The notes beneath the pieces are model-generated. The model made no database searches. It saw nothing but the letters and a program-made list of their open reading frames with translations, and was not told the origin of the DNA. Shown here piece by piece: positions 25,757 to 40,897 of a stretch of DNA of 64,000 bases. Made by a program: the position numbers and the translations under genes. The number at the start of each line of letters is the position of its first letter. The stretch's first letter is position 1. The stretch is from the IMG/VR virus record IMGVR_UViG_3300029993_000005, positions 124,001-188,000 of that record; one strand, 5' to 3'.

Positions 25757-27160
25757 CTATGTTGTGGGTAATTCTGCCACTACTTCTAAATTGAAATTGA
25801 TCGTACACAAGGCACCTAACAATTGATTGCATGTAGGCAACGTCAATCTAGATACCTGATTCGATTGTTCTGTAGTTGTAATCGTGGTGTTAGTCAAATT
25901 AGTTTCGGTGACATTCAAGAAATTTAGGGTTGGTGCACCTAATCTCTTGAAGGCGTAATTCACCATCATCTGGGCCGCATCTCCGTCAGATAGTCGGCCA
26001 GCCCAACCCAGTGAATTATTGTTAAACATCTCATAGTAGAACAGACATCTAGCCGTTGTAATACTCAGGTCCTCGTACTCGTAACCTGTGTACGAGGGTC
26101 CTAGTTCCCATTGAACCTCTGTTAAATTCAGTGTAAAGGTCCCTGGTGTTAAAGCCGTTGCTAGCTGTATCCTACAATAATTATTAGCACCAATGGTCTT
26201 ACCCTGGACTGATGGAACATTTATGGTCTGTGTGTAAAGGGTCCAAGCCCCGGATGTCAACGTAATTGCTGAGCCCGCAGTAGTCACCGTTGTTGAACCT
26301 GAGGTCCCGAAATTTTGATAACTCGTTGGTGTTAGGGTCATCGCTTTAGACGGGTTAGCCCAGAAACTAATAGTCGCAGTCTGTCCTGAATACGTCGTTA
26401 CATCGTTCACGGACTGACTGATATAGGGTGTGCCTGTACCCGCCGTTTCTTGCCACACAAAATAGGTTGAACTGCCAACAGGAAACGTCGTAGCGCTCCC
26501 TGTGCTTACCGTGGACCCATTGCTAAACATGTACCAGCGGTCAGCAATGAAGCCAGCCTGAGCCCCTGCAGCGGGCACTGATCGCTGCCAGACAATGAAG
26601 CGCCCGTTTATGATTTTGTTCTTTGGTTCATTGACGATGAAATTACCACTAGTATTAGGACTCACACCATTGATCGTCTTTACCAACTGTGTAGTCGTGT
26701 TCAATGGTGTGTAGGCCGCAACCCAAATGGACCATGCACCACTCACGTACTGACGTACATAAATAGAGCCGTCAAACGTGCCACCCAAGGCCGTAAACAA
26801 TTGAGTAACCGCTGATGTTGTGCCATTATTAGTAACCAACAACGTTGCATTGAGGGCTCCCGTATTTGTGGGGAACGTTCCTGATGCTGTTGATGGTGCA
26901 TAATAAAATCCAGTACTGAATGAGGTATCGAGATTTGTTATTGTGGCACCAACCCCAGTTATGCCGTATGTAGAGGCTACAGTAGTTGTGAGCGTTGTAG
27001 CCAGAATAGAAGCACTAGCCAATTCTTTAACTATCCCCGAACTATTTAAGGTCCATAAAGTACCGTCTGCGTAATTTATGGCTAACTGGCCTGCTGTTAA
27101 GTTATCTGCTGCTGGGGCAAGTCCCGGTGTTGAGTTACGAAGATGCAGGAGTTTTGTCAT
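25757..27160 (-). CDS. Tail fibre / receptor-binding protein with T4 gp37-like N-terminus, knob and CBM-like domain
   Basis: LHLRNSTPGLAPAADNLTAGQLAINYADGTLW; KNKIINGRFIVWQR...ADRW...VQWELG. Confidence 0.75.
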   Translation of the reverse strand: MTKLLHLRNSTPGLAPAADNLTAGQLAINYADGTLWTLNSSGIVKELASASILATTLTTTVASTYGITGVGATITNLDTSFSTGFYYAPSTASGTFPTNTGALNATLLVTNNGTTSAVTQLFTALGGTFDGSIYVRQYVSGAWSIWVAAYTPLNTTTQLVKTINGVSPNTSGNFIVNEPKNKIINGRFIVWQRSVPAAGAQAGFIADRWYMFSNGSTVSTGSATTFPVGSSTYFVWQETAGTGTPYISQSVNDVTTYSGQTATISFWANPSKAMTLTPTSYQNFGTSGSTTVTTAGSAITLTSGAWTLYTQTINVPSVQGKTIGANNYCRIQLATALTPGTFTLNLTEVQWELGPSYTGYEYEDLSITTARCLFYYEMFNNNSLGWAGRLSDGDAAQMMVNYAFKRLGAPTLNFLNVTETNLTNTTITTTEQSNQVSRLTLPTCNQLLGALCTINFNLEVVAELPTT

Positions 27161-27212
27161 ATTTTATATAGCGGGATCCTAAATCCCCACATCTCCTAAC
27201 TAAATTCTCTAT

Positions 27213-27440
27213 CTAGGTGCTCGTGCCTCGTCCGTTCATCCTCAGTAGTCGCTGTTCTTGTTCCCAATCATCGCGGCATTCTGTATTGCAGAATACGTGA
27301 GGCGATTTGACTGGCGTATCACAATAATAGCAGCTACCAGAGAATAATAACGTGCTTGACCTAGCACGATTACGAACGGCCTGTATTGCGCGAGCCATGT
27401 TTTCTGCCTCTGCGTCTTGAACAAAATCTAAATCATCCAT
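27213..27440 (-). CDS. TraR/DksA-like C4 zinc-finger protein
   Basis: MDDLDFVQDAEAE...CYYCDTP...FCNTECRDDWE. Confidence 0.6.
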   Translation of the reverse strand: MDDLDFVQDAEAENMARAIQAVRNRARSSTLLFSGSCYYCDTPVKSPHVFCNTECRDDWEQEQRLLRMNGRGTST

Positions 27441-27544
27441 GAGCCTAAGTCCTGTTTTAGTGATATTTTTATTGTTACCGTTGCCACTATATAAAATTAA
27501 CAGGGCACGATACTAACTTGTATCGTTCACCAATTTATAAAACT

Positions 27545-27573
27545 AAGGCCCCCTGTACAAGCGGGCCTTTTGT
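27545..27573 (+). terminator. Terminator-like hairpin with U-tract on + strand
   Basis: AAGGCCC...GGGCCTTTTGTT. Confidence 0.5.
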
Positions 27574-27590
27574 TAATTACTAACTTTGAA

Positions 27591-28832
27591 TTACGTACCT
27601 GTGTAAGTACCTTCATCCAGGGTCAATGCACTCGTATTGACCGAGAACACACCCGCGGACACAGACAGACCGGAACCAGCTTCGGCCAAGCCCAATGCCG
27701 ATGCAGTAGCCACCGGAAGATTTGCTGTAGGCACGGTTGCAACCCAGGTGGATACACCCGAGCCATTGGTAGACAAAATCAGGGAATCGCCAGATGAGGC
27801 ACCGACTTGAGCAGCAGATATGGTAGCAACCCAAGTAGGAGCACCTGCACCGCTGGTTGTGAGTACTAAATTATCACCAGCTGAGGCCCCCAATTGAGCA
27901 GCTGCAAACGTACCTGATGTAATAGACGCAGCGGTGAGCACAACAGCGCCAGTCTGACCATTAACTGAGGTAACAGCACCTTGTGTTGATATAGTGCTCC
28001 AAGCTGTACCGTTGGAGATTAAATAGTCACCACCGGCAAAGGTCAGCAACGTTCCTGAGGGTGGCGTGTACGTGCCCGCCGTACTAGCGATGTAGTACCA
28101 GCCCTTATTACCCGTAGCAGCCGCAGGAAGGGTAGTTGTACCCGGAATAAACGGTGCTTGATAGTCCACAGCACCAATCAGGGACGCCGGAATATTGGCC
28201 AAAGGCACTAAGCCACTCGAGTCCAGTGGCGCAACACCATTTGCCACGTTAATTTCTGACGTCGAAATACCACCCAAATAAGACAAAGCGGCAGCAGTCG
28301 TGGTCTCTGTGAATAACGTAGCACCAACGGTAGATGCACCAATTGCTGTTTGAGCCGCAGCTGTTGAGGCTGCGGTAAATACAGCAGCACCCACTGTCGT
28401 ACCGCCAAGACTAGTCACAGCCGCAGTTGCGCTGGCCGTGGTAAACAATGCTGCACCCAAAGTCGAGGCCCCGATAGCCGTCTGTGCAGCGCCGGTCGAA
28501 GCAGCGGTGAAAACTGCTGAACCTACGGTAGTACCGCCCAAGGCCGTGACTGCAGCAGCTGCGGTACTGGCCGTAAATACAGCGTTACCAACAGTAGAAG
28601 CTCCAAGATTGGTGGGGGTTAATGTCACGTTGCCTGAAACCGGACTTACGCTATTAACCGAAGTAACGGTCCCGCCACCCGCACCACCCAGCGAAACTAC
28701 AACGCCACTGGAATTTAGTGCATACAACTTTTCATCTGCCGTGTTAATTGCTAATTGACCGGCAACCAATTCATCAGCACCTGGAATTAATCCTGGTGTG
28801 GAACTACGTTTCATTTGGACAACTGCAGCCAT
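27591..28832 (-). CDS. Tail fibre segment with T4 gp37-like N-terminus and Ala/Thr-rich repeats
   Basis: VQMKRSSTPGLIPGADELVAGQLAINTADEKLY; GASTVG.AVFTA(S)TAAAA repeats; ends LDEGTY. Confidence 0.75.
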   Translation of the reverse strand: MAAVVQMKRSSTPGLIPGADELVAGQLAINTADEKLYALNSSGVVVSLGGAGGGTVTSVNSVSPVSGNVTLTPTNLGASTVGNAVFTASTAAAAVTALGGTTVGSAVFTAASTGAAQTAIGASTLGAALFTTASATAAVTSLGGTTVGAAVFTAASTAAAQTAIGASTVGATLFTETTTAAALSYLGGISTSEINVANGVAPLDSSGLVPLANIPASLIGAVDYQAPFIPGTTTLPAAATGNKGWYYIASTAGTYTPPSGTLLTFAGGDYLISNGTAWSTISTQGAVTSVNGQTGAVVLTAASITSGTFAAAQLGASAGDNLVLTTSGAGAPTWVATISAAQVGASSGDSLILSTNGSGVSTWVATVPTANLPVATASALGLAEAGSGLSVSAGVFSVNTSALTLDEGTYTGT

Positions 28833-28853
28833 GATAGACTACTCCTTAAAATA

Positions 28854-29402
28854 TTAACCAACGAATGCACCCGCATCAAGAAAGTCTTGCAACGGTTCCC
28901 ACGTACCGTCAACCCTGACAAAAGGTTCGTCAGGTACTACCGGAGCTTCCGGTACCGCTGCCGACGCCGGAGTCATAGTAGAAGTTTGTACTACTAAATA
29001 CACATCATTCGCAGAAGCTGGAGATTCTAAGGTAAGTCCTGTTTCACCTACGGTGTAATTAACAACTTGTACGCCGTATCTGTAGACCAGAATATTCGCG
29101 GTTCCTGATGGACCTACCTGAAGCAAAGTTGAACCTTGATTGGGAAAACAAATAAAGGTGGAACTGACAGTGAATAATTGATCACAGAACACAGCGAATG
29201 GTGCCATGTACCTCCATTGTCCACCTTGAGAGTTAATAACCCATTGATAAATACCTGCAATAGCACTACCGTTGTTCTGTGTCAGAATCACACTTAAACT
29301 TTCAGATGGTTCTAAGGGTAGACTATCAACCGTCGGTGATTGACTAGGCACCAAGGTACCATTTGACTGGACAACTGTGTAGGGGAAAAATATTAAACTC
29401 AT
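28854..29402 (-). CDS. Tail fibre connector-like protein
   Basis: VPEAP..DEPFVRVDGTW motif; ends LDAGAF. Confidence 0.5.
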   Translation of the reverse strand: MSLIFFPYTVVQSNGTLVPSQSPTVDSLPLEPSESLSVILTQNNGSAIAGIYQWVINSQGGQWRYMAPFAVFCDQLFTVSSTFICFPNQGSTLLQVGPSGTANILVYRYGVQVVNYTVGETGLTLESPASANDVYLVVQTSTMTPASAAVPEAPVVPDEPFVRVDGTWEPLQDFLDAGAFVG

Positions 29403-29445
29403 GGTCTACCTCGGTGACTAGTCGTTGATTTTATACAGTGGTTAG

Positions 29446-30093
29446 TTATTCCCCACCTTCTTTATTTTCTGTTGGTGCTTCTAATTGATACGTATTCGGA
29501 CTCAAGAGTTCCAATCCATCCATTGCTGTTGCGGCAGTGAGCTTAAGTCTTGCCTGATAGACATTTTTAATATGCGGAACAATCCGTGTATGGAACTCCG
29601 GATGACAGCGCATGGTGTTCAGGTGATCGGCCGGAATCGATCCTTGGCTAATCATGTAGTTCTCGACTCTGGCTTGAAGTTCAAGTAACCATTCCTCTTG
29701 CTGACAAGCTTCAGTAGCTTCAAGCAAGGGAAGGTGAGCGTATTTGCGATGAGGCTCAAGCTTATCCATGTTTTCTTGGATATCTACGAGTTCCATCTTA
29801 GCTGCTTGCAAATTCATTTCCCATGTAGGGACATCAGCCAAGGCTTCAGCAATATCGGCTCTAGCATAAAGTTTCTCGCTAGGCTTTGCCTTTGGATCAT
29901 CCAATACCTCTTCAGCAGCCATGATCTTGGCATCACGTTTGAGTTTCTGTGCTTCAGCATGCCTAAGCTTGCCCTCGATATCTATCTTCTGCCCGTACAT
30001 CAAGGACCATGCACCATCTGCGGTTTTGCAATCACCGGCCATGAAATACGTTAATTGGAATTTGGAGTTCTGACGATGTGGTTTTGAGTTCAA
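29446..30093 (-). CDS. Hypothetical coiled-coil protein
   Basis: 215-aa helical ORF. Confidence 0.55.
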   Translation of the reverse strand: MNSKPHRQNSKFQLTYFMAGDCKTADGAWSLMYGQKIDIEGKLRHAEAQKLKRDAKIMAAEEVLDDPKAKPSEKLYARADIAEALADVPTWEMNLQAAKMELVDIQENMDKLEPHRKYAHLPLLEATEACQQEEWLLELQARVENYMISQGSIPADHLNTMRCHPEFHTRIVPHIKNVYQARLKLTAATAMDGLELLSPNTYQLEAPTENKEGGE

Positions 30094-30151
30094 TTTGGTA
30101 CCTATATTTGTAGGAAGGGGTTTTGACTTTATTGTTTTGGACTACTAATTT

Positions 30152-30508
30152 CTATTCTTCCCATTCAGGAATTTCTACGGTTTGTCCTGCTAACTTATGC
30201 GTGCAGTCATTCAAGAATTGAATCATCCCATCCTTAATAAACGAGTGACACACCATAGCCTTCTTTTCCTGCACTATCTCGCCGCTCTTAATCTTTGACC
30301 TAATCTCTGGATTAGACGCGGACGGAAACCACTGGTCCCATTTAACTAATACACTAGGGCTAACAGTTGGAAAGAATACATTGCCATTAAACGTCCAGAC
30401 AGGGTGGCCGGTTCCCGCCACATGCACCATGTGCATGGACTCACAACCAGGACACTCAAACAACATAGATTTTGTTCCGTTTGGTTTGTCTTTGGTATAA
30501 AATTTCAT
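30152..30508 (-). CDS. DUF6527-like Zn-binding protein
   Basis: FECPGC...WTFNGN...PTVSPSVLV...CHSFIKDGMIQFLNDCTHKLAGQTV. Confidence 0.75.
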   Translation of the reverse strand: MKFYTKDKPNGTKSMLFECPGCESMHMVHVAGTGHPVWTFNGNVFFPTVSPSVLVKWDQWFPSASNPEIRSKIKSGEIVQEKKAMVCHSFIKDGMIQFLNDCTHKLAGQTVEIPEWEE

Positions 30509-30535
30509 GGCTTAACCTGTCTGGGATTTTAGTTA

Positions 30536-31144
30536 CTAGGGAGCAACCCAAACGATTGCTTGAATTTCATCAATCGCACTATCGGTTGACGTTGTGATAG
30601 CCAAGATCGAAGCAGCTAGTGTCAAATTCTGATTGATAATTGCTTGTTTATTAGTTTCGCTATCAGTCAATACTTGCTGAATTTGTGCAGCTGTATGGGC
30701 AACCATAGCACCGACACCACTTGAATTGGTACAATAGAGTTGCGTCGTCCAACCCCCAACTTGTCCTGCTGCGGTAAACGAAAGTGCAGAAGCACCTAGG
30801 ATATTTAGTTGATCCTGTACTTGAGACGGATAGGTATAAGCCGAACCCAAGGCACTAGAGGTAAAACCAGCAACCAATGCCGCTTGATACCCGGTAGCCA
30901 CGATTGCAATCTGTTGAGACTGAATACCGGATAGACCATATAGAAGAACTTCAACCTCTTCAAGCGTCAGAGTACCAGCAGTGTCCACCCAATATTGAGT
31001 GCGATCCGCTGCATTCGTGGAATACGGATTCCATGTTGGTGTGGTAGCGTACAGCGATACAAACGTCGAGGGTAATGTCGGTTCCGAATAACCTTCGCCT
31101 TCAGGGGTCAACGGATACACCAACGGTGAGTACATGGTTGTCAT
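30536..31144 (-). CDS. DUF4376-like tail fibre assembly/tip protein
   Basis: GFTSSALGSAYTYPSQVQDQLN...AHTAAQIQQV...AIVW. Confidence 0.75.
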   Translation of the reverse strand: MTTMYSPLVYPLTPEGEGYSEPTLPSTFVSLYATTPTWNPYSTNAADRTQYWVDTAGTLTLEEVEVLLYGLSGIQSQQIAIVATGYQAALVAGFTSSALGSAYTYPSQVQDQLNILGASALSFTAAGQVGGWTTQLYCTNSSGVGAMVAHTAAQIQQVLTDSETNKQAIINQNLTLAASILAITTSTDSAIDEIQAIVWVAP

Positions 31145-31169
31145 CTTATTTCCTTAGTTACGATTACGG

Positions 31170-31493
31170 TCAGTAAGGTACAACAAACCCAGCCGGAACC
31201 GGGATCGTTGCATTAGATAGGCAATGGCCCTTGCCCATTAGGTGATCGATCATTGGGCCGATAATCTGTGCCCAACGTTTGCCTTGAATCAAAGCGTTAC
31301 CGGTCCTAGCACTTATGGTCTGAATAGGAGGACCACCGAACAAGGAGTTGCCTTCTTCACCCTCAGCGATTTCCATATTCTTGGCCCTGTTCTTCGACCC
31401 AAACAGTGCTTGAGCTACCAAGAACAGGGCCAGAAATGGCATGAAGACGATGCATATTACGGCTAGGCCAAACAGCTGAAGTCTAGTCATCAT
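31170..31493 (-). CDS. Small membrane protein
   Basis: N-terminal hydrophobic helix; TISARTG...W...ID...GHC motif. Confidence 0.55.
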   Translation of the reverse strand: MMTRLQLFGLAVICIVFMPFLALFLVAQALFGSKNRAKNMEIAEGEEGNSLFGGPPIQTISARTGNALIQGKRWAQIIGPMIDHLMGKGHCLSNATIPVPAGFVVPY

Positions 31494-31499
31494 CGTTCC

Positions 31500-32117
31500 T
31501 TACGCGACAGAAGGTGCAGCCCACACAATGGCTTGAACTGCGTCCACTGGATTAGGCGTAGCGTTGGTAACGGCCATGATCTGACCTGCTAACACAATGT
31601 TCTGCTGGATATTAGCCAATTTCGAAGCTACGAAGTCAGAGCCTACCTGTTGGATTTGTGCAGCCGTGTGGGCACGCATTTCCCAGTTACCGGTGGAGTC
31701 TGCGCACCAGAACGTAGTAGTCCATCCTGCCGCCTGACTAGCAGCCAACTGCGACAGGGTGATTTCCCCGTTAAGATTCAGTTGATCTTGTAGCTGAGAC
31801 GGGTATGTGTAGGCCTCACCTAATGCACTGGATGTAAAGCCTGCGAAGATCGCGGCCTGACATCCGGCACTAACCAATGCTACCTGTGCGGTCTGAATAC
31901 CCGTTAGGCCGATCAGCAGAATCTCTACTTCTTCGACGGTGAGAGTGCCCGCTGTATCCGCCCAGTATTCCGTGCGGTCGGCCACATTAGCCGAATAGGG
32001 ATTCCATGTTGGGCTGATACCGTATTGGCTAACGAATGTCGACGGCAGCTCAGGTCTGGAATAACCTTGTCCTTCTGGGGTCAGTGGGTAGACTAAAGCT
32101 GAATACATGGTTGTCAT
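31500..32117 (-). CDS. DUF4376-like tail fibre assembly/tip protein (paralogue of 30536..31144)
   Basis: Near-identical N-terminus MTTMYS.LVYPLTPEG.GYS. Confidence 0.75.
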   Translation of the reverse strand: MTTMYSALVYPLTPEGQGYSRPELPSTFVSQYGISPTWNPYSANVADRTEYWADTAGTLTVEEVEILLIGLTGIQTAQVALVSAGCQAAIFAGFTSSALGEAYTYPSQLQDQLNLNGEITLSQLAASQAAGWTTTFWCADSTGNWEMRAHTAAQIQQVGSDFVASKLANIQQNIVLAGQIMAVTNATPNPVDAVQAIVWAAPSVA

Positions 32118-32130
32118 TTCATTTCCTTAA

Positions 32131-34212
32131 TTACATGTTGACGCCGAGATTGCCATTGTTGACCGAAGCGCCTGCGAAGAGGGTGGCCGTTAGAACCGTA
32201 CCTGCGACCACCGTATCACCACTGTAGGTTATGACGTTGGTTGTCGTCGACGTGTTACCTATTGCAAAGATACCAGTCATAGAATTGCCAGCGGCATTAC
32301 CGAAAGACGTTGTGGTCGTTAGGCCCGTACCAGCGACAACTGTTGCACCAGAATACGTAAAGGTGTTTGTCGTCGAAGTGCTGTTACCTAAAGCGAAGAT
32401 ACCTATGTTGCCGTTACCTGCGGCCATACCGCGATAAGCACTGGTACTCAGAGACGTGCTGGAGGCAACAGTGTTTCCGCTGTATGTGTAAGCATCTGTG
32501 GCGGCCGACGTGTTCGAAATCGCAAAGATACCGGTTGTCGAATTACCTGCTGCCGTACCTGCAATCATGTTGCCCGTCAACCCCGTACCTGCCGCAGTGG
32601 TATCACCGCTATAGGTTAGGATGTTGGTTGTGGTCGAAGAGTTACCCATTGCAAATATACCGACCGTGGTATTACCAGCAGCCCCACCACCACCCAACAC
32701 AGCGGTTAATGCGGTCGATGCCACCACACCAGCCGTCGCAAACGTAAACGCGTTCATCGTTGTGCTACCAGACGATCCGCCTAATGCCAGATAACCTATT
32801 GAGCTTGTACCCGCACCCGCACCACTGCTAACGTTGGCCGTCATTGCTGTCGAGGCTGCAACCAAGTTACCGCTATACGTGTATTTGTTTGATGTCGTAG
32901 TGGTGTTACCAGTGGCAAATATTGAGTACGTACCATCTGGGTTTTTGAACTGCGTGAGCGATGCGAGTAACGTGTAGGTCGCGCTTGCTGTTTTAAGAAT
33001 CGTGAATGTGTACTGGTCTACACCATTCTGATTACCCGTGCTCGGGGTTATACCACCCAACCACCGGGGAGTTATTGCTGTACCGTCTATCTCGAACGCA
33101 TTAGCAACATATGCGGTAGTACCCTGGGTAGCCATCAGCACGGCCGTCATCGAATCACCAACAGACATCGCAGTGTTCAGCGAGGTCGACGACGAGAACG
33201 CAAAGTTTATAGTCCAGTTGTTTGCTGCGTTGGTGGTGTAATACTGAACCTTACCACTTGCCAGATATAGATTCTGCGTTGAGCTAGGAGCTGCACCTAC
33301 CACATCTGCAAGGTCCGTGGTGTTAGTAAGCTTGATTGCCTGAGCTGTTGCTGAACCATTGAATATCTGTGTAGTTGAATAAGGACTACCTGAACCACCG
33401 CTTGGTGCCGTCGACTGCCAAGTTGTACCGTTGGATGTTAATACGTTTCCAGAAGTACCTGGAGCTACAGTTTGTAGTGCTGACGTTCCATTACCTAACA
33501 ATACATCATTGGCTGCTAGCGTTGCAGCCCCCGTACCGCCCGATGCTACACCTAAAGCGGTTCCAATATTCAGCGCACCTCCGATACCCACACCGCCCGT
33601 AACAACTAAGGCCCCAGTGGAACTAGACGTTGAGGCTGTCGAAGCCGTGACAGTCGTTGCCCCATTGGACGTCAGGGTCGTGAAGGCCCCCGTACTCGGT
33701 GTAGTCGAGCCAACGGGAGTCCCATTCAAGGCTGCAATAGTTAATGAATTAGCATTAATTGCACCGCTTACACCTAGGCCTCCAGTAATAACCAAGGTGC
33801 CTGTCGTTGTGGACGACGAAGCAGTGCCAGCGGTCATTGTTACTGCCCCCGATGCAGCCAAAGTGGTGAATGAAGCAGTGGATGCGGTAGAACTACCGAT
33901 TGGAGTATTTTGCAAAGAACCTGCGTACACAGCACCACTAATACCTAGGCCCCCAGTAATAACTAGAGTTCCTGTCGTAGTGCTAGTGCTTGCTGTTCCT
34001 GCTGTTAAAGTCGAGGCACCTGAGGCCGTCAACGTAGTAAATGATGCAGCACTTCCATTACCCGTAATTTGGATGATAGCCGATCCAGTACCCACATAAA
34101 GCAAACCTGAAGACAAATTAACAGCTAGTTGCCCGGCTACCAATTCATCTGATCCAGGTACTAGTCCCGGACTTGAACTTCTTTTTAACTGGACAACTGC
34201 AGTCATGATCAC
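32131..34212 (-). CDS. Tail fibre: gp37-like N-terminus + S/T-rich shaft + W.GG.P domain + ~41-aa repeat propeller-like tip
   Basis: VQLKRSSSPGLVPGSDELVAGQLAVN; PRWLGGITPSTGNQNGVDQYTF; AAGNSTTGIFA...TYSG.TV..GT.L repeats. Confidence 0.75.
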   Translation of the reverse strand: MIMTAVVQLKRSSSPGLVPGSDELVAGQLAVNLSSGLLYVGTGSAIIQITGNGSAASFTTLTASGASTLTAGTASTSTTTGTLVITGGLGISGAVYAGSLQNTPIGSSTASTASFTTLAASGAVTMTAGTASSSTTTGTLVITGGLGVSGAINANSLTIAALNGTPVGSTTPSTGAFTTLTSNGATTVTASTASTSSSTGALVVTGGVGIGGALNIGTALGVASGGTGAATLAANDVLLGNGTSALQTVAPGTSGNVLTSNGTTWQSTAPSGGSGSPYSTTQIFNGSATAQAIKLTNTTDLADVVGAAPSSTQNLYLASGKVQYYTTNAANNWTINFAFSSSTSLNTAMSVGDSMTAVLMATQGTTAYVANAFEIDGTAITPRWLGGITPSTGNQNGVDQYTFTILKTASATYTLLASLTQFKNPDGTYSIFATGNTTTTSNKYTYSGNLVAASTAMTANVSSGAGAGTSSIGYLALGGSSGSTTMNAFTFATAGVVASTALTAVLGGGGAAGNTTVGIFAMGNSSTTTNILTYSGDTTAAGTGLTGNMIAGTAAGNSTTGIFAISNTSAATDAYTYSGNTVASSTSLSTSAYRGMAAGNGNIGIFALGNSTSTTNTFTYSGATVVAGTGLTTTTSFGNAAGNSMTGIFAIGNTSTTTNVITYSGDTVVAGTVLTATLFAGASVNNGNLGVNM

Positions 34213-34257: not shown

Positions 34258-35061
34258 TTACTTATATAGGCCTTTCAGGATTTCTTTTGCTTTTTCATAC
34301 TTAGATTTATCCTTGGCCGATGCATTGCCGCCCTGGCGATTAACGTAGAAATTTAACCTTTCCATGGCTTTAGCTTCACTATCGGATGCACGTTTCAAGG
34401 TCTTTGCTATGTGATCAGCGCTCTTTGTGAACGTACCTTCTGGAACAACTCCGTGTTCAGGTTTCACGTCTTTAATCCATTTATCCGCCTCAACTTCTAC
34501 ACTACCTATAGACGTGCTGTTACCTGGGTTTTGCAATGAGTTATAAATAGAGGCCTCAAGTTTTTCGACCTCAACTAAGCGTAGAGCTGCTTTGATACTT
34601 AATTTATCATTCGGCATTTGCAAATCCTTTAATTGATCTTCTAGGATTCCTAAGCCACCACCTACAGGATCATCTAGGTTATGACCTGGTGGCAGTGCGT
34701 ATAAAGGGTATCCAGCGCTAGCAGTTTCTGCAGGTTGCCCATAGGCTTGTCGTAATGCGTTCTTTGCATCGTAGAGACGGGCTTTATCCCCACCTTGAAG
34801 ATTACGCCCCTGGCTGTTTATATACCCAGAAAGTTTTGACATCGCCTGCTTGTAGTCCGTCGAATGCTGCTTCAATACATGAGCAATTTCAGAAGCACTT
34901 TTTGTGTACGTACCCTCAGGCAACACCTGATCTGGTTTTCGGGCCTTACCTTTGTAGCCCTGCTTCATTTCCCGCTGCCACTGGTAGTTCTTATTATTGT
35001 TTGGCGGATCAGTTACCTGAGTTTCAGCCAAGAGACGATGCACAGCTTTGCTGAGGTTCAT
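34258..35061 (-). CDS. Protein with two DUF3175-like domains
   Basis: Two copies of V.PEGT(Y/F)TKSA..IA..LK......AM..L..Y.N.QG.N....DK.....AK..L. Confidence 0.55.
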   Translation of the reverse strand: MNLSKAVHRLLAETQVTDPPNNNKNYQWQREMKQGYKGKARKPDQVLPEGTYTKSASEIAHVLKQHSTDYKQAMSKLSGYINSQGRNLQGGDKARLYDAKNALRQAYGQPAETASAGYPLYALPPGHNLDDPVGGGLGILEDQLKDLQMPNDKLSIKAALRLVEVEKLEASIYNSLQNPGNSTSIGSVEVEADKWIKDVKPEHGVVPEGTFTKSADHIAKTLKRASDSEAKAMERLNFYVNRQGGNASAKDKSKYEKAKEILKGLYK

Positions 35062-35075
35062 TTAGCAGTCCTATA

Positions 35076-35675
35076 TTAGATAGAAGTTTTAGAGAGCCAC
35101 CCAGTCGTCACATCGTAGGCTTCCCACTGTTCAACTGTAGTGAGCTTAACTATTGCTTCGTGATGAACTTTCTCATTAGAGAAATTCTGTTGAATAACAG
35201 ATGTCACGGCCGTACACAACTTGTTAGCTTGTTGAGGATTAATAGTTAGCCATACATTGTTTGGGGCCTTGAAGTCAATTGAGGATCCGGACCCATAATT
35301 AGCTAAGTCTCTAAGATAAAGCCACGTAGTGTTATCGACTACTAGTGAGGCCCCGTTCATAGCGATTTCAATATCCTGACAAGCTAGCCAACGTTTATTT
35401 GCTACCTTGGTCAGAAGAATTTTCTGCCCTTCTGTTACTGTTACTGGCGTCTGAATCCAAGTCTTGACATAGGAAATTCCTTGTTCCTCAGGTACGCCTT
35501 CTACAGTAGTTATAAACATTGAGGCTTGCGGCTTTGGTGTAGCTATTAACTCTGCAACGTCAAAACCTTGAAGGTGATGTGCTTTTAATTCTGCCGGAAA
35601 TGATACTAATGGGTGTCTTAATCGAAGTTCCGTTTCAGACATTACTGTTTTTGTTTTACGATCAATCAACAACAT
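35076..35675 (-). CDS. DUF4376-like tail fibre assembly protein
   Basis: ELRLRHPLVSFP...; DFKAPNNVWLTI...V...F..E...I...D.T.GW. Confidence 0.65.
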   Translation of the reverse strand: MLLIDRKTKTVMSETELRLRHPLVSFPAELKAHHLQGFDVAELIATPKPQASMFITTVEGVPEEQGISYVKTWIQTPVTVTEGQKILLTKVANKRWLACQDIEIAMNGASLVVDNTTWLYLRDLANYGSGSSIDFKAPNNVWLTINPQQANKLCTAVTSVIQQNFSNEKVHHEAIVKLTTVEQWEAYDVTTGWLSKTSI

Positions 35676-35712: not shown

Positions 35713-36588
35713 TTAGGTACCATTTACATTATAGACTCCGTTAGAACAGGCTTCCGTCAGGTTTAAAGCTGCGGTTAAAGAGGTACCTGTAGCCACAGCA
35801 CTAGTTGAATAGTTGTAAGTGTTCGTGCCTGCTGTGGAGGCACCTCTAGCTATAACACCCAAACTTGAATTACCTGCCGCTGCTCCCGCTTGGACATCCG
35901 CCGTTGCAGTACCCGCAGTTACTGCATCAGACGAATAAGTGTAAACACGAGACACACCATTGTTACTTGCAAAAAACACACCAAACGTAGAGTTTCCACA
36001 TGCACATCCATTACCTGATGAAACCACGCCCAAGCCCGTACCCGAGGCAACGGTTGCTGCCCCATACTGGTACTTAGAAGTAGTAGCATTACCTGCTCCA
36101 GCACCCGCAGAGAATACGCCCTGTGTTGAGTTACCCGCAGCACCCCCTGTGTTATTGAATGATGATAGATTCAAAGATGTAGCAGCTGCGGTAACTGCAC
36201 TACTATAAGTGTAGGAATTGGTGATGTCCGTGCCACCACCCCTAGCAAAAATCCCAATAGTAGAATTACCTGCAGCCAAGCCTTCACTTACATTATTAAT
36301 AAATGAAGTGCCAGCAGCTATTGAACTACTACTCCAGGTATAAGTGTTGGATATCTTCCCACCACCAATGGAAAATATGCCAACGTTATAGGTGCCAGCC
36401 GCAGACATCCCAGAGTTGCCCACAGTTGCAGTTAATGAAGCACCCGTGGCAACCCCGTTAGTGCTAAAAGTATAGACGTCGGTCACACCGCCTACAGTCA
36501 ATGCAAATACCCCATAGGTACCATCAGGAGGACCCGGCGGTACATACGGAGTTTTCTTGCTAGCTAACAAAAAGGTAAAGTTTGCCAT
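35713..36588 (-). CDS. Stand-alone ~41-aa repeat propeller-like adhesin/tip protein
   Basis: Repeats AAGNSTxGIFA.G...T..YTYSS..V.AGT.L. Confidence 0.65.
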   Translation of the reverse strand: MANFTFLLASKKTPYVPPGPPDGTYGVFALTVGGVTDVYTFSTNGVATGASLTATVGNSGMSAAGTYNVGIFSIGGGKISNTYTWSSSSIAAGTSFINNVSEGLAAGNSTIGIFARGGGTDITNSYTYSSAVTAAATSLNLSSFNNTGGAAGNSTQGVFSAGAGAGNATTSKYQYGAATVASGTGLGVVSSGNGCACGNSTFGVFFASNNGVSRVYTYSSDAVTAGTATADVQAGAAAGNSSLGVIARGASTAGTNTYNYSTSAVATGTSLTAALNLTEACSNGVYNVNGT

Positions 36589-36589: not shown

Positions 36590-39500
36590 TTATGTTTCCA
36601 TGTTCAAACCGATCACAAACACCATGTAGTAGCCACCGACCGTATCCCACATAATGCCTAACACATCATTACCCGAGGCTGTTAAGGCTGGTGCTGTTCC
36701 ACCGGCAAACTGAGTACCCGAGGGCCAATTAATAGTTTGTGATCCGCCATTACCTATGCGAAGGAAAGCCACTTGTCCCGTTGAAGCCCCCAAAGTATTA
36801 GTGAAAGCAAACGTCGTTGTCCCGGTAACTGAAATTACCCACTCGCTTGCTAATCCTAAGTTCAATGTTTGTGTCCCGGACGTGGCTCCCAAATTAACTA
36901 CGCTGTAGCTGTATGCGGGACTCTGAACACGACCGGTAAATGACGGGCTGCTTAAGCTGGCCGGAGTGTATGTTAATGCTGTTGTAACATCAGAACTAGT
37001 CAGTGTAACAGCACCTGTTCTGGAATTAAAACTAGTTACACCAGCACCACTAACCGCAGCAGTAACAAAAGCCGTCGTTGCTACCTGAGTTGTGTTGGTA
37101 CCCGACGTAGCTGTTGGCGCTGTTGGAACTCCGGTTAACGCCGGACTAGCTAGAAGTGCACCGCCAGCGCCTGTGATGTCAGCACTACTCAGAGTTACTG
37201 TTCCTGAACGCGTATTGAACGATGTCACTGCAGATGCGCTTACTTGAGCCTGGACAAATGCTGTGGTTGCCAACTGGGTTGTATTCGTGCCTGTCGTGGC
37301 CGTCGGTGCGGTCGGCACACCTAATATACCTGGGCTTGTTGTTGGCAACGGTGTATAACCCAATGCGGTTATTACGTCACCCGAGACCAGACTTACAGCA
37401 CCAGTGCGCGTGTTGAAACTAGTTACTACACCAGAACTAATTGCAGCCTGGACAAAGGCCGTAGACGCAGCTTGTGTTGTTGACGTTCCTGTTGTTGCTG
37501 TAGGAACTGCTGGAACACCCGTGAATGTAGGACTAGCCAGTGGTGCTGTGGTTGCCGCATTAGCCGCTGTGTACCCTAGAGCTGATGCAATATCCGAACT
37601 AGTTAAGGTAACAGCACCAGTACGAGAATTAAAACTGGTAACTGCATTGCTAGAAAACGCACTGATCGAGGCATTCACAAAAGCCGTTGTTGCAAGCTGC
37701 GTCGTATTAACTCCAGTCGTAGCTGTCGGTGCCGTTGGTGTGCCAGTAAATGCGGGACTAGCTAATGGAGCAGTTGTTGCAGCATTTGCAGCGGTGTAGG
37801 TTAATGCGGTATTAACATCACTGGCAGTTAATACCACTGCACCAGTACGAGAATTAAAACTAGTTACACCACTAGCACTTGCGGCCACGACGGCATGAAC
37901 AAAAGCGGTTGTTGCCAATTGAGTGCTAGATGTTCCTGTACTAGCGGTTGGTGCCGATGGAACGCCCGTGAAAGTGGGTCCAGCCAATAGGGCACCGCCA
38001 GCATTTGAAATATCTGTGCTAGTTAGAGTTACAGCACCAGTACGAGAATTAAAGCTGGTGACTCCCGCAGGAATATCCGCAATTTGCGTATTTACATAGG
38101 ACTGCGTAGCATAGTTTGCATCATTAGTGAAGGCACTGACATTTGATGGAACAGTGGGGATCGTCGGTTTATTGCTAAGATCTGTGTATGACCCAGTTGA
38201 CGCAACGGTAGCCAAGCCCCCAATATCCGAAGTTGTTAAAACAACGGTTCCAACGCGTCCTGCAACCGACGTCACATCCGAAGTAGTGCCAGAGATGTGT
38301 TGCCATTGACCGCCATTGAACAGCGCTACATCGTTGACACTCCAGTCTGAGTTCCCGTCCAGATCGGTGGTGCCTGCAACACTTACTTTATAGAATTCAC
38401 CTAGAGTCCCTACACCTGAGGTCAAAGTCGGTGTGTTAGTCGCCGCGTTCCACACACCTTCGTAAGTTAGTCCGCCGGTAACACCTGAGAGTGCAGCTTC
38501 AACAAACGCAGTGGTAGCTAATTGGGTTGTGTTCGTGCCGTTTGCTGCCGTAGGACCAGAAGGAATTCCAGTGAATGTAGGACTAGAAATAGGTGCCACC
38601 AGCGATTGGTTGGCCGCCGTGTAACCCAGAGCCGTTGTTATGTCACCAGTGGTAAGAGTTACCGCGCCGGTCCGCCCGTTAAACGACAATACGTTGGCGG
38701 ACACACTAATTGTCCCATCGCTAGCGATAGTCGTACCAAAACCCTGTTTAACACCACCCAATACTGACGAGGTGGCGATGGGTAAACTATAGGGAGCACC
38801 AACACTAATTTCTCCGTTCAAAACAGAAATATTGGCACCAATGGTTACTCCACCCAGAACGGTGGACGTTGCTTCAGGTAATGTGTAGGGGTCATCAACG
38901 GAGATAACTCCATCATTTACTTGAATATTTTGACCAATAACTACACCACCTAGCGTAGACGTAGTGGCTTCCACTAGTTCATAAGGCGCACCAACACTAA
39001 TTGTTCCATCGCCAGCAACACTGACGTTGGCCCCAATCTTTACACCACCTAAAACAGAAGAAGTACTGACCGGAAGTGTATAAGAATTAACGCCTGAGAT
39101 CGTCCCGTCTGAGGCAATCTCAATATTGGCACCTTGTTTAACACCGCCAAGAACTACTGCGGTTGCAACAGGCAACGTGTAGCTAGCTGCATTGGCGCTT
39201 AGTACACCCTCGGCGGTGATCGTCAGGTTGTTCCCCACTATTACTTGACCCAATTGAACAGTGGTCGCAATAACCGGAGTCACAGCCGCTTCTAGTCCTG
39301 GAATATTTGCAATATTAATTTCAACATTGCCAAAACCGTCAGGCGTTTGGTCATTCACTGACGTTATGGTGCTATTCGAAGCAGTGATCGGATAAGCAGC
39401 CCACACTAAGCCTAGTCCCGGTTCAATAATTGAACCCGAAGTCCACAGGGTTCCGTTGCGCCAGAGTTTAGTTGTTGACGGAACAGTCACAGGTACACTT

Positions 39501-39754
39501 ACATCGAAATAAAGTTCTAATGGCGCACCGAAAACAATTCCTTCACATACGAATGTGTAGGGAAGTACGAACCGCCATTGAGAACCATCAAACAAATACA
39601 TACCCTGATCTTGACTACCTGAGGCAACAGGAAGCACTGCTACTTGGTCGGTGACTTGCTGAGGACTTGGCAGGCTAACGACCCATGGAGCATTAACAAT
39701 TGCCTGCTGGGTCCCCATATTGAGCGTTACTTGGTAATAGAAATTGCTTTCCAT
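36590..39754 (-). CDS. Long tail fibre with GVTSFNSRTGAV / APLASPTFTGVPTAPT repeats
   Basis: Repeats visible directly; LP.AT..VLGGV repeats; C-terminal INWPSGTQFAGGTAP domain. Confidence 0.85.
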   Translation of the reverse strand: MESNFYYQVTLNMGTQQAIVNAPWVVSLPSPQQVTDQVAVLPVASGSQDQGMYLFDGSQWRFVLPYTFVCEGIVFGAPLELYFDVSVPVTVPSTTKLWRNGTLWTSGSIIEPGLGLVWAAYPITASNSTITSVNDQTPDGFGNVEINIANIPGLEAAVTPVIATTVQLGQVIVGNNLTITAEGVLSANAASYTLPVATAVVLGGVKQGANIEIASDGTISGVNSYTLPVSTSSVLGGVKIGANVSVAGDGTISVGAPYELVEATTSTLGGVVIGQNIQVNDGVISVDDPYTLPEATSTVLGGVTIGANISVLNGEISVGAPYSLPIATSSVLGGVKQGFGTTIASDGTISVSANVLSFNGRTGAVTLTTGDITTALGYTAANQSLVAPISSPTFTGIPSGPTAANGTNTTQLATTAFVEAALSGVTGGLTYEGVWNAATNTPTLTSGVGTLGEFYKVSVAGTTDLDGNSDWSVNDVALFNGGQWQHISGTTSDVTSVAGRVGTVVLTTSDIGGLATVASTGSYTDLSNKPTIPTVPSNVSAFTNDANYATQSYVNTQIADIPAGVTSFNSRTGAVTLTSTDISNAGGALLAGPTFTGVPSAPTASTGTSSTQLATTAFVHAVVAASASGVTSFNSRTGAVVLTASDVNTALTYTAANAATTAPLASPAFTGTPTAPTATTGVNTTQLATTAFVNASISAFSSNAVTSFNSRTGAVTLTSSDIASALGYTAANAATTAPLASPTFTGVPAVPTATTGTSTTQAASTAFVQAAISSGVVTSFNTRTGAVSLVSGDVITALGYTPLPTTSPGILGVPTAPTATTGTNTTQLATTAFVQAQVSASAVTSFNTRSGTVTLSSADITGAGGALLASPALTGVPTAPTATSGTNTTQVATTAFVTAAVSGAGVTSFNSRTGAVTLTSSDVTTALTYTPASLSSPSFTGRVQSPAYSYSVVNLGATSGTQTLNLGLASEWVISVTGTTTFAFTNTLGASTGQVAFLRIGNGGSQTINWPSGTQFAGGTAPALTASGNDVLGIMWDTVGGYYMVFVIGLNMET
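37011..37177. repeat. 167-bp perfect repeat copy 1 (copy 2 at 44696-44862)
   Basis: Base-by-base identity GCACCTGTTC...GCCTGTGAT between two fibre genes. Confidence 0.9.
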
Positions 39755-40473: not shown

Positions 40474-40897
40474 TGTGACCTCCATCAATATATAAAAGAG
40501 CAATCGTGAAAGATTGCTCTGTGTAACGTATTGGATTTAATTTGTATTGAACAATCAGCGATACTGTGTACAGTCCATCCTCTAGGTCACCTGGAACCGT
40601 CACCTCATAGGCCATGTCTTTTACATCGTCTATGAGGAGTTCCGGGGACACAAGTTTATATTTTTTATTTTCAGATTGAATTATGGACCGCACGTACAAA
40701 GGTCCTGGTAAATCTTGAAGAGCAGGTGTCGGAATATAATTTTCCACTCCACCCTTGAACCTAACCATGGCTGATGGCTCTATATCTAACTGCGGTTGTT
40801 CTCTTATCCAATAGACAGTTGTCCCACCTATTGCTCCTAGCACGCTACATATTAAGGCCAGTGCCAGACTCAATAGAAACCCCTTACGTCTATTCAT
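40376..40897 (-). CDS. Bitopic membrane protein in lysis cassette (paralogue B)
   Basis: N-terminal TM; DGLYTVSLIVQYKLNPI. Confidence 0.6.
   Translation of the reverse strand: MNRRKGFLLSLALALICSVLGAIGGTTVYWIREQPQLDIEPSAMVRFKGGVENYIPTPALQDLPGPLYVRSIIQSENKKYKLVSPELLIDDVKDMAYEVTVPGDLEDGLYTVSLIVQYKLNPIRYTEQSFTIALLYIDGGHNAVFDNNDTTSTASPESGSGASSGPESSSSPN

What the first reader, a model, noticed from the sequence alone, without database searches (positions are those of the whole stretch)
25757..34212. Candidate chained/branched fibre system using gp37-like N-domains and C-terminal LDxGx(Y/F) motifs
Seen: three proteins (25757..27160, 27591..28832, 32131..34212) start with (Q/H)(M/L)(K/R)(R/N)S(S)TPGL.P..D.L.AGQLA.N. 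Two upstream proteins end in LDAGAF (28854..29402) and LDEGTY (27591..28832). Established: the N-domain resembles T4 gp37's N-terminus (IQFKRSK..G.RP....LAEGELAIN), which joins the distal fibre to the preceding segment. Inference: LDxG tails are sockets for gp37-like heads, building a chain (182 aa to 413 aa to 467 aa) with the 693-aa fibre as an alternative terminal branch, a plug-and-socket adhesin network.
Basis: partly seen in the sequence, partly recalled or inferred. Interest (0 to 1): 0.6.

Follow-up and report, generated by a model that had tools for sequence, protein, structure and literature searches.

The report
Reusable end-to-end joint in phage fibres
In this 230-kb jumbo phage, a short C-terminal tail on one tail-fibre protein most likely docks onto the T4 gp37-like head of the next, chaining 182-, 413- and 467-residue proteins; the same tail-and-head pair recurs in many unrelated phages, so it may let fibre wiring be read from sequence.

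Summary
In the whole 230-kb phage genome, exactly three ORFs start with the gp37-like head. Exactly two fibre ORFs end in L-D-x-G-x-(Y/F) within 3 residues of the stop, and each lies directly upstream of a head gene.

- T4 gp36, which binds the N-terminus of gp37, itself ends in ...QDFGYY*. The pair is therefore the T4 gp36-gp37 joint, used twice in series here.
- The 182/413/467 trio is syntenic with BcepSaruman gp274/273/272.
- Two reciprocal scans of viral contigs show strong linkage. Of head genes, 33/69 have a G-G-x-(F/Y)* ORF directly upstream, against 32/1932 other ORFs. Of IDGGTF* ORFs, 56/102 are followed by a head, against 12/2239 controls.
- A 3+3 co-fold of the 413-aa tail with the 467-aa head scored ipSAE 0.83 (best control 0.17). 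The tail strand pairs with head residues 3-9, and the aromatic sits in the conserved P..L..GQLA core.

Still inference:
- Direct binding has not been measured.
- Covariation did not survive a test that allows for relatedness.
- The 693-aa fibre has no tail-bearing partner of its own. Its head is about 82% identical to the 413-aa head over the contact strand, so sharing the 182-aa adaptor is plausible but untested.

The parts
28854..29402 (-). 182-aa adaptor. It has an N-terminal beta-rich anchor domain (about residues 1-140), a Pro-rich linker (about 141-158), and a C-terminal YVR..G.W hairpin plus tail.
   Evidence: No Pfam, PHROG or NCBIfam hit. An exhaustive search found 17 representatives. 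All short ones (162-211 aa) end in L-x-(E/A)-G-x-(F/Y), with 0-3 further residues. Long ones (600-1100 aa) share the anchor and continue as fibre. 37% identical to BcepSaruman gp274. AF2 model pLDDT 87.
28857..28928 (-). Tail module of the adaptor, residues 159-182: FVRVDGTWEPLQDFLDAGAFVG.
   Evidence: Read from the sequence. Conserved across the adaptor family. It is followed 21 nt downstream by the 413-aa head gene.
27591..28832 (-). 413-aa middle fibre segment with a head at the N-terminus and a tail at the C-terminus.
   Evidence: 55% identical over its full length to BcepSaruman gp273. Residues 190-305 match tail-protein PHROGs, and the head matches gp37 PHROGs.
28683..28832 (-). gp37-like head of the 413-aa protein (residues 1-50).
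27594..27635 (-). Tail of the 413-aa protein, residues 400-413: SALTLDEGTYTGT.
   Evidence: These are the interface residues in the co-fold. BcepSaruman gp273 has the same motif, LDEGTYSGT.
27213..27440 (-). 75-aa zinc-ribbon-like ORF in the spacer between the 413- and 467-aa genes. It is not part of the joint.
   Evidence: Weak DUF2116 treble-clef hit below the Pfam cut-off. Absent at this place in BcepSaruman, where gp273 and gp272 are adjacent.
25757..27160 (-). 467-aa distal segment with a head at the N-terminus and a likely receptor-binding C-terminal part. It has no tail.
   Evidence: Residues 180-436 match a tail-fiber PHROG (E 3e-32). 52-65% identical to BcepSaruman gp272. It ends ...VVAELPTT with no G-x-(F/Y).
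27011..27160 (-). gp37-like head of the 467-aa protein (residues 1-50).
   Evidence: In the co-fold, residues 1-9, 14-17, 20-21, 25, 27 and 44 touch the 413-aa tail.
32131..34212 (-). 693-aa fibre (691 aa from ATG 34206): a head, an Ala/Gly/Thr-rich shaft, and a C-terminal domain of about 45-residue repeats. No tail-bearing gene lies upstream.
   Evidence: Only the head matches any BcepSaruman protein.
34057..34206 (-). gp37-like head of the 693-aa protein.
   Evidence: 23 of 28 residues are identical to the 413-aa head over the strand and core. The DNA around the ATG has a 20-nt stretch that matches the 413-aa gene except at one base, the G/A after the ATG.
36590..39754 (-). 1054-aa fibre whose N-terminal anchor is paralogous to that of the 182-aa adaptor. 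It has neither tail nor head, so it is a separate one-piece fibre.
   Evidence: Residues 1-273 are 37% identical to BcepSaruman gp281 1-282, and residues 322-546 resemble gp280 79-286. Local similarity to the 182-aa anchor and alignment with it in A4. Many tail-fiber PHROG hits.
35713..36588 (-). 291-aa protein homologous to the C-terminal repeat domain (residues 425-693) of the 693-aa fibre.
   Evidence: 39% identity, E 1e-20.
35076..35675 (-). 199-aa DUF4376 protein downstream of the 291-aa gene. It is a candidate fibre assembly factor.
   Evidence: Pfam DUF4376, 27.7 bits against a cut-off of 25. Tail-protein PHROGs.
31500..32117 (-). 205-aa DUF4376 protein directly downstream of the 693-aa gene.
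30536..31144 (-). 202-aa DUF4376 paralogue.

Best explanation
The region encodes a segmented tail fibre whose pieces are held together by one reusable joint. The joint is the one between gp36 and gp37 in the T4 long tail fibre.

Each joint has two halves.
- A tail: the extreme C-terminus of the upstream protein, of the form hydrophobic-(D)-x-G-x-(F/Y) plus 0-3 residues.
- A head: the first 45 or so residues of the downstream protein, of the form (K/R)(R/N)S..PG..P....L..G(Q/E)LA.N..D..LY.

In the trimer, each tail strand lies against the first beta-strand of a head (residues 3-9). The tail aromatic packs into the conserved head core (P16, L21, Q25, A27 in 467-aa numbering).

The 182-aa protein is an adaptor. 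Its N-terminal domain anchors it on the virion, probably on the baseplate, and its tail carries the 413-aa segment. The tail of the 413-aa segment carries the 467-aa receptor-binding segment.

The 693-aa fibre has a head of the same subtype as the 413-aa protein. It most likely uses the same 182-aa tail, either as an alternative occupant or at other copies of the adaptor.

Shown: the motifs, their positions, their homology to T4 and BcepSaruman, and their linkage across phages.
Modelled: the geometry of the contact.
Inferred: actual binding, where the adaptor is anchored, and where the 693-aa fibre sits.
For: 1. T4 gp36 ends ...VQDFGYY*, and the next gene is gp37, starting [26 protein letters not shown]. 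Trimeric gp36 binds the N-terminal region of gp37 (PMC3004832).

2. BcepSaruman has the same trio, and a third joint.
- gp274 ends ..LNEGAFVGH*.
- gp273 has a head and ends ..LDEGTYSGT*.
- gp272 has a head.
- gp281 ends ..IDGGVIG* and is followed by gp280, which has a head.

3. Every short member of the adaptor family ends in the tail. Three more distant contigs repeat the adaptor-then-head layout: L134, L256 and L257. L256 has the full three-part chain.

4. Scan from the head side: 120 viral contigs.
- The motif always lies 20-30 residues from an ORF start.
- 33/69 directly upstream ORFs end in G-[GCA]-x-[FYW]*, against 32/1932 other ORFs (odds ratio 54, p 1e-34).
- Most of the 32 lie in the same fibre clusters.

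5. Scan from the tail side: of 102 ORFs ending IDGGTF*, 56 (strict) or 74 (relaxed) are followed within 250 nt by a head ORF. Controls give 12/2239 and 69/2239.

6. Cultured phages from other families show multi-joint chains: Vibrio phage 172P1 (Zobellviridae) and Melnitz-1 (Kyanoviridae).

7. Co-fold of three copies of 413-aa residues 354-413 with three copies of 467-aa residues 1-80.
- ipSAE was 0.84/0.83/0.83, and the best of 3 controls was 0.17.
- Partner pLDDT was at least 81, and the runs shared at least 96% of contacts.
- In the tool's calibration the mark was reached by 58 of 80 solved complexes and 2 of 110 mismatched pairs. These counts hold only roughly here, because my own alignments and six chains were used.
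- The interface is tail residues 400-401 and 403-413 with head residues 1-9, 14-17, 20-21, 25, 27 and 44.

8. No solved chain contains the head, so the pass is unlikely to come from memory of a solved complex.

9. Raw association: the tail Asp goes with Arg/Lys at head position 8 (67, 3, 7, 16; odds ratio 51). The model puts the tail Asp against the same head strand: it contacts position 5, and positions 5, 7 and 8 all covary with it in the raw alignment.

10. In about 250 loci, tail and head are never fused in one ORF. This fits a need for free termini.
Against: - No measurement of binding exists, and no virion proteomics for this phage.
- The co-fold is a model that ran on my own alignments.
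- The Asp/Arg association did not survive a test that allows for relatedness. There were only 4 supported independent pairs, so it is underpowered.
- The linkage is not universal. About a quarter to a half of IDGGTF* proteins are not followed by a recognisable head. About half of the heads have no tail ORF directly upstream: for example L008 and P-SSM5, and families where a small gene intervenes.
- The 413- and 467-aa genes are separated by 430 nt and an extra ORF.
- The 693-aa head has no cognate tail gene.
- The anchor fold of the adaptor gave only weak matches (best Z 7.8, under the tool's trust mark), so the point of attachment on the virion is unknown.
Confidence: 0.72

Rival explanations
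1. The tail and the head are independent end caps of trimeric fibres. The tail would be a C-terminal folding or trimerisation nucleus and the head an N-terminal cap or general virion-attachment domain. They would sit next to each other in genomes only because fibre genes cluster, and each head-bearing fibre (413, 467, 693) would attach to the baseplate on its own.
For: - Many heads have no tail ORF directly upstream, and many IDGGTF* proteins are followed by something else.
- The 693-aa fibre has no tail partner.
- In P-HM1 the head sits on a protein annotated as gp7, a baseplate wedge protein.
Against: - Adjacency is far above what fibre clustering gives. Controls were taken from the same loci, most of which are fibre clusters.
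- T4 biochemistry places gp36 on the gp37 N-terminus.
- The 182-aa adaptor would have no purpose if its 24-residue tail bound nothing.
- The co-fold passed its controls.
- Three-part chains recur in unrelated phages.
Confidence: 0.12
2. The conserved sequences around the stop and start are mainly recombination linkers. Short shared DNA and protein blocks at gene borders would let phages swap distal fibre modules. Conservation would then reflect exchange rather than a protein contact. This could also hold in addition to the joint.
For: - The 413- and 693-aa genes share a 20-nt stretch around the ATG that differs at only one base, and a nearly identical head on unrelated shafts.
- Heads and tails are attached to very different shafts across phages.
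- Fibre modules are mosaic between this phage and BcepSaruman.
Against: - Conservation is at the protein level, with many synonymous differences.
- The motif persists between phages with no DNA similarity.
- A linker role does not explain the fixed position at the free termini, or the absence of fused forms.
Confidence: 0.1
3. The 693-aa fibre does not share the 182-aa adaptor. It would dock on the 413-aa tail in place of the 467-aa segment, on the internal ..VGGYY.. near the end of the 1054-aa fibre, or directly on a baseplate protein.
For: - No experiment or model addresses it.
- The 1054-aa protein ends ..DTVGGYYMVFVIGLNMET, which holds a G-G-Y-Y 11 residues from the end.
- Tail-less contexts for heads exist elsewhere.
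Against: - The 693-aa head is closest to the 413-aa head over the contact residues (VVQ(M/L)KRS, GL(I/V)P, DELV), not to the 467-aa head (HLRNS, DNL).
- In all 94 tails of alignment A3 the motif lies at or very near the C-terminus; no tail with an 11-residue extension was seen.
- A baseplate candidate (374 aa, ends GTNGTYISG) is not conserved in relatives.
Confidence: 0.3

Closest known systems
T4 long tail fibre, gp36-gp37 junction (distal half-fibre)
   Same: - The head is homologous to the gp37 N-terminus.
- gp36 ends in D-F-G-Y-Y*, the same D-x-G-x-aromatic tail, directly upstream of gene 37.
- gp36 is a short trimeric connector that binds the gp37 N-terminal region, much as the 182- and 413-aa proteins would.
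   Different: - No gp34, gp35, gp38 or gp57 counterparts were found here.
- The joint is used twice in series, and there is a third head.
- The first tail sits on a small adaptor with an unrelated anchor domain.
- The tails carry a 2-3 residue extension (VG, TGT), and the head core reads GQLA rather than GELA.
Burkholderia phage BcepSaruman gp274-gp273-gp272 and gp281-gp280 (Sarumanvirus)
   Same: The adaptor, middle and distal proteins are orthologous (37%, 55% and 52% identity) and in the same order with the same motifs. The 1054-aa fibre shares its anchor with gp281.
   Different: - In BcepSaruman every head has its own tail upstream: three joints, three tails.
- Here the gp281-like protein has no tail and looks like a one-piece fibre, and the 693-aa head is an orphan.
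- The database annotates these genes only as tail, tail fiber or hypothetical proteins.
Branched receptor-binding complexes of CBA120 (TSP1-4) and G7C (gp63.1/gp66)
   Same: Several receptor-binding proteins are hung on one another through dedicated N-terminal modules. Residues 79-141 of the adaptor model weakly resemble CBA120 TSP4 residues 187-250 (Z 7.5, rmsd 1.9 over 62 residues).
   Different: Those systems branch sideways through gp10-like XD domains (my recollection of the literature). Here the connection is end to end, through a C-terminal peptide and an N-terminal head. The fold match is below the tool's trust mark.
The wider 'RRG..L..GEP...D..LY.G.G' N-terminal fibre domain (my own label for it)
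   Same: Many IDGGTF* proteins are followed by this relaxed form of the head, such as MANKILLRRGLKSKLPTLSAGEPAYTTD. The gp37-type head therefore looks like one branch of a larger N-terminal family.
   Different: Membership was not tested here. No Pfam, NCBIfam or PDB model matched the heads of this window.

Membership tests
T4 gp37-type N-terminal head | Sequence similarity to the first 50-60 residues of gp37. | tested here: met
   phrog_1699 and phrog_19966 positions 7-58 (E 1e-7). tblastn finds 335 records, mostly gp37. Alignment A1 has G, P, G, A and N invariant.
T4 gp37-type N-terminal head | Position at the extreme N-terminus of a fibre protein. | tested here: met
   True of all three proteins here and of all 80 listed matches of the first contig scan.
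T4 gp36/gp37-type joint | The upstream gene product ends in (D)-x-G-x-(F/Y) at its free C-terminus. | tested here: met
   Met for the 413-aa head (182-aa tail, 21-nt gap). Met for the 467-aa head (413-aa tail, 430-nt gap holding a 75-aa ORF). Not met for the 693-aa head.
T4 gp36/gp37-type joint | Physical binding of the tail-bearing trimer to the head. | tested here: inconclusive
   The co-fold supports it: ipSAE 0.83 against a best control of 0.17, partner pLDDT at least 81, and at least 96% of contacts shared between runs. The mark was reached by 58/80 solved complexes and 2/110 mismatched pairs in calibration. A model cannot show binding.
Complete T4-type long tail fibre (gp34-gp35-gp36-gp37 with gp38/gp57) | Presence of a proximal half-fibre, a monomeric knee protein and the T4 chaperones. 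| tested here: not met
   No PHROG or Pfam hit to gp34, gp35, gp38 or gp57 families among the proteins scanned in the window. Only the joint is shared.
Sarumanvirus-type adaptor/middle/distal fibre trio | Orthology and gene order with BcepSaruman gp274, gp273 and gp272. | tested here: met
   blastp gives 37%, 55% and 52% identity at E 4e-39, 3e-117 and 1e-119, in the same order and strand.
gp10-like/XD branching adaptors (CBA120 TSP2/TSP4, G7C gp66) | An XD (gp10-like) domain fold in the adaptor. | tested here: inconclusive
   Foldseek found nothing at E <= 0.001. VIA-align gives TSP4 residues 187-250 at Z 7.5, alongside podovirus fibre N-domains at Z 5-8, all under the tool's trust mark of 8.

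The most novel reading that the evidence does not exclude
The tail/head pair is a portable connector code used by very different phages (Straboviridae, Kyanoviridae, Zobellviridae, Saruman-like jumbo phages and many uncultured ones). A few contact residues would set which head docks on which tail: the tail residue four before the aromatic against the basic residues of the head strand, and the tail aromatic and its extension against head position 20. In this phage one adaptor tail (182 aa) would then be shared by two different fibres, the 413-467 chain and the 693-aa fibre, so that a single genome makes virions with mixed or alternative fibre sets.
Probability: 0.3. Interest if true: 0.75.

Novelty: new variant of a known kind. 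Interest (0 to 1): 0.6.

Why it matters
Fibre genes are usually annotated one by one as 'tail fiber protein', with no way to tell which proteins form one fibre.

If the C-terminal G-x-(F/Y) tail and the gp37-like head are the two halves of a joint, the order of segments in a fibre can be read from sequence. That would cover jumbo phages, T4-like cyanophages, marine podoviruses and uncultured contigs.

It would also give:
- a structural hypothesis for the T4 gp36-gp37 junction, for which no solved chain with the head was found;
- a natural cut-and-paste point for building chimeric fibres in laboratory phages;
- a way to spot 'orphan' heads, such as the 693-aa fibre, that hint at shared or alternative docking.

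I found no paper in the searchable library that describes the tail motif. That library is incomplete, so prior description cannot be excluded.

Tried and rejected
With a single head it found only 9 loci. I switched to degenerate DNA patterns; the first pattern had too few specified bases.
- Megablast of the region against phage genomes found no match.
- Pfam and NCBIfam have no model for the head, the tail or the adaptor.
- PDB profile searches with 7 and 94 heads gave only chance-level hits.
- The word-index protein search for the adaptor found 2 proteins. The exhaustive search was needed.
- The 374-aa baseplate-module protein (15316-16440, ends ..GTNGTYISG) was considered as a socket for the 693-aa head. 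I rejected it because the Gly is not kept in BcepSaruman, RSL1 or Motura.
- Covariation allowing for relatedness (treekit independent_pairs) gave only 4 supported pairs, with the sign test at p 0.5-1. The raw odds ratio of 51 therefore cannot be taken as co-evolution.
- A search for tail and head fused in one ORF found none.
- The AF2 model of the 291-aa repeat protein had pLDDT 42 and was unusable, so it was not searched.
- Foldseek of the adaptor model against the PDB found nothing at E <= 0.001.
- The first complex-prediction run failed because the machine was busy; the same request was repeated once.
- One item was a mistaken 20-residue fragment and gave nothing.

Full report
CONTEXT

The window is bases 124001-188000 of a 230,110-bp virus record from IMG/VR, estimated 97% complete. 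Its proteins resemble those of the jumbo myoviruses BcepSaruman/BcepSauron, phiRSL1 and Motura.

The + strand up to about 25 kb carries tail and baseplate genes: tail tube, a gp25-like subunit, hub, wedge subunits, and a 572-aa protein with a tail-collar fibre N-domain. The - strand from 25.7 to 39.8 kb is a fibre cluster, followed by a lysis cassette.

THE OBSERVATION

The head motif occurs in exactly three ORFs of the whole genome: 467 aa (25757-27160), 413 aa (27591-28832) and 693 aa (32131-34212).

The tails LDAGAFVG* (182 aa, 28854-29402) and LDEGTYTGT* (413 aa) are the only fibre-protein C-termini of this kind among 565 long open frames.

The likeness to T4 gp37 is statistically supported.
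- PHROG families of the distal long-fibre subunit match the head at profile positions 7-58.
- tblastn of the first 50 residues finds 335 phage records, mostly annotated gp37.

Two details need correcting.
- The 413- and 467-aa genes are separated by 430 nt holding a 75-aa zinc-ribbon-like ORF.
- The 693-aa protein probably starts two codons later, at ATG 34206.

THE KEY LINK TO T4

T4 gp36 ends ...SVQDFGYY*, and the next gene is 37. This is a D-x-G-x-aromatic tail at the free C-terminus, like the two tails here.

The T4 literature states that trimeric gp36 binds the N-terminal region of gp37 (PMC3004832).

No chain in the PDB copy contains this head. A 2026 T4 preprint fitted only a predicted gp37 at low resolution. 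I found no paper naming the tail motif.

RELATIVES

BcepSaruman has the orthologous trio in the same order.
- gp274 (184 aa) ends ..LNEGAFVGH*.
- gp273 (371 aa) has a head and ends ..LDEGTYSGT*.
- gp272 (372 aa) has a head.
- A third joint also exists: gp281 (774 aa, ..IDGGVIG*) followed by gp280 (head).

The adaptor family is small.
- It has 17 representatives among 1.8 billion proteins.
- Every short member (162-211 aa) ends in L-x-(E/A)-G-x-(F/Y), with 0-3 further residues.
- Long members share the anchor and the YVR..G.W motif and then continue as a shaft.

A homologue 82% identical to the adaptor ends ..LIEGTFVG. Asp is therefore not essential; G-x-(F/Y) is.

Contigs L134, L256 and L257 carry an adaptor followed by a head gene. 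L256 repeats the full three-part chain.

SURVEY ACROSS PHAGES

From the head side:
- I used a degenerate DNA pattern for A-G-E-L-A-I-N-x-x-D on IMG/VR contigs.
- In every case the motif lies 20-30 residues from an ORF start.
- 33 of 69 directly upstream ORFs end in G-[GCA]-x-[FYW]*, against 32 of 1932 other ORFs in the same loci (odds ratio 54, p 1e-34).
- Most of the 32 are in the same clusters, either one small gene away or ahead of a variant head.

From the tail side:
- I used a pattern for I-D-G-G-T-F-stop.
- Of 102 evaluable ORFs, 56 (strict) or 74 (relaxed) are followed within 250 nt by a head ORF.
- Control ORF ends give 12/2239 (strict) and 69/2239 (relaxed).

Multi-joint chains are common.
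- Uncultured examples: L011 (351 to 557 to 980 aa), L027, L035, L090, L102 and L104.
- Cultured phages from other families: Vibrio phage 172P1 (146, 173, 159 and 598 aa in a row) and Methylophilales phage Melnitz-1.
- In cyanophage P-HM1, a protein ending TIDGGTF* is followed by a small coiled-coil ORF. The next protein, annotated gp7, opens with a head.

Exceptions exist. Some heads have no tail upstream (L008, P-SSM5), and some tails are followed by other genes. Tail and head are never fused in one ORF.

MODEL OF THE CONTACT

I co-folded three copies of the last 60 residues of the 413-aa protein with three copies of the first 80 residues of the 467-aa protein. Each had a 94-row alignment of true adjacent pairs (A3, A2).

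Scores:
- ipSAE was 0.84/0.83/0.83, against a best control of 0.17.
- Partner pLDDT was at least 81.
- The runs shared at least 96% of contacts.
- The tool's mark was reached by 58 of 80 solved complexes and 2 of 110 mismatched pairs in its calibration. That calibration holds only roughly for a six-chain job with my own alignments.

Interface:
- On the tail side: residues 400-401 and 403-413.
- On the head side: residues 1-9, 14-17, 20-21, 25, 27 and 44.
- The tail LDEGTY pairs with the head strand KLLHLRN.
- The Tyr touches P16, N20 and A27, which belong to the most conserved head positions.

Across 93 pairs, the tail Asp goes with Arg/Lys at head position 8 (67, 3, 7, 16; odds ratio 51). The strongest mutual-information pairs fall on the same strand. 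A test on independent pairs of a tree had only four supported contrasts and no power. I therefore count this as consistent, not as evidence of co-evolution.

THE ADAPTOR AND THE OTHER FIBRES

The 182-aa model (pLDDT 87) has these parts:
- a beta-rich anchor (residues 1-140);
- a low-confidence Pro-rich linker;
- a hairpin (FVRVDGTWEP) before the tail.

Residues 79-141 weakly resemble N-terminal attachment domains of podovirus fibres and CBA120 TSP4 residues 187-250. The best Z is 7.8, under the tool's trust mark. The place of attachment therefore stays open.

The 1054-aa fibre shares the anchor but has neither head nor tail. It matches gp281 at its start and gp280 further on, so it looks like a one-piece counterpart of a fibre that BcepSaruman builds from two proteins. 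Shaft modules are widely shared, though, so I do not lean on this.

The C-terminal repeat domain of the 693-aa fibre is paralogous to the 291-aa protein and occurs in podovirus-like contigs (L009, L013). Its fold could not be predicted.

Three DUF4376 proteins lie downstream of the 291- and 693-aa genes. They are candidate assembly factors.

WHERE THE 693-AA FIBRE GOES

There are three heads and two tails. The 693-aa head matches the 413-aa head in 23 of 28 residues over the strand and core. That includes the positions that touch the tail in the model (VVQ(M/L)KRS, GL(I/V)P, DELV). The 467-aa head differs there (HLRNS, DNL).

The simplest reading is that the 693-aa fibre and the 413-467 chain use the same 182-aa tail. 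This is inference only. The alternatives are the 413-aa tail, the internal GGYY of the 1054-aa fibre, or a baseplate protein. One baseplate candidate was rejected.

VERDICT

- The plug-and-socket chain is well supported by comparison and by one controlled model, and it equals the T4 gp36-gp37 joint used serially.
- The 'alternative branch' is plausible but untested.
- The system is a new variant of a known kind.
- Its wider value is that the joint can be recognised from sequence across many phage groups.

Noticed in passing
window 34204-34212: The 693-aa ORF listed from GTG 34212 most likely starts at ATG 34206. An AAGGGG ribosome site lies 6-11 nt upstream, and the ATG aligns with the start of the 413-aa gene. 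The 20-nt stretch there matches the 413-aa gene except at the base after the ATG (ATCATG(G/A)CTGCAGTTGTCCA).
   Followed up: yes
window 35713-36588 and 32131-32940; L009:4684-6848; L013:5904-7118: A domain of about six 45-residue repeats (YTYSG..V.A.T.L......GAAGNS..GIFA.GN) occurs as a free 291-aa protein and as the C-terminus of the 693-aa fibre. It also occurs in small podovirus-like metagenomic contigs. It has no family hit, and the AF2 model failed (pLDDT 42).
   Followed up: partly
window 30536-31144, 31500-32117, 35076-35675: Three DUF4376 proteins (202, 205 and 199 aa) lie just downstream of the genes carrying the repeat domain. The 202- and 205-aa paralogues flank a 107-aa hydrophobic protein. 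They are possible fibre assembly factors. The same layout is seen in contig L134.
   Followed up: partly
window 36590-39754: The 1054-aa fibre holds about ten copies of a unit of roughly 45 residues (..VTSFNSRTGAV.LTS.D......YT.A......P.FTG.P.APTA..G..TTQ.ATTAFV..). It also has phi29 head-fibre-like repeats near residues 145-360. It is 37% identical to BcepSaruman gp281 at its start and resembles gp280 further on.
   Followed up: partly
window 34258-35061: A 267-aa protein with two DUF3175 repeats sits inside the fibre cluster. It is 60% identical to BcepSaruman gp275, which lies at the corresponding place. Its function is unknown.
   Followed up: no
window 29446-30093; L009:6876-7493: A 215-aa protein (MNSKPHRQNSKFQLTYFMAGDCKTADGAW...) has no family hit. 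It has a clear homologue next to the fibre genes of an unrelated small metagenomic phage contig, so it travels with the fibre module.
   Followed up: no
L255 (Prochlorococcus phage P-HM1, record 68824-71958): The huge protein annotated gp7 'baseplate wedge initiator' opens with a gp37-like head. The gene two places upstream ends in TIDGGTF*, and a 68-aa coiled-coil ORF lies between them. The same small coiled-coil ORF follows many IDGGTF* genes in marine contigs (L137, L145, L178, L194, L197, L212).
   Followed up: partly
window 27213-27440: A 75-aa ORF with a CxxC...CxxxC zinc-ribbon pattern (weak DUF2116 hit) is inserted between the 413- and 467-aa genes. BcepSaruman has no gene at that place.
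   Followed up: partly
window 39799-41411: A lysis cassette lies directly upstream of the fibre cluster on the - strand. It has a 234-aa endolysin (55% identical to the BcepSaruman gp282 GH19 endolysin) followed by two 173-aa ORFs.
   Followed up: no
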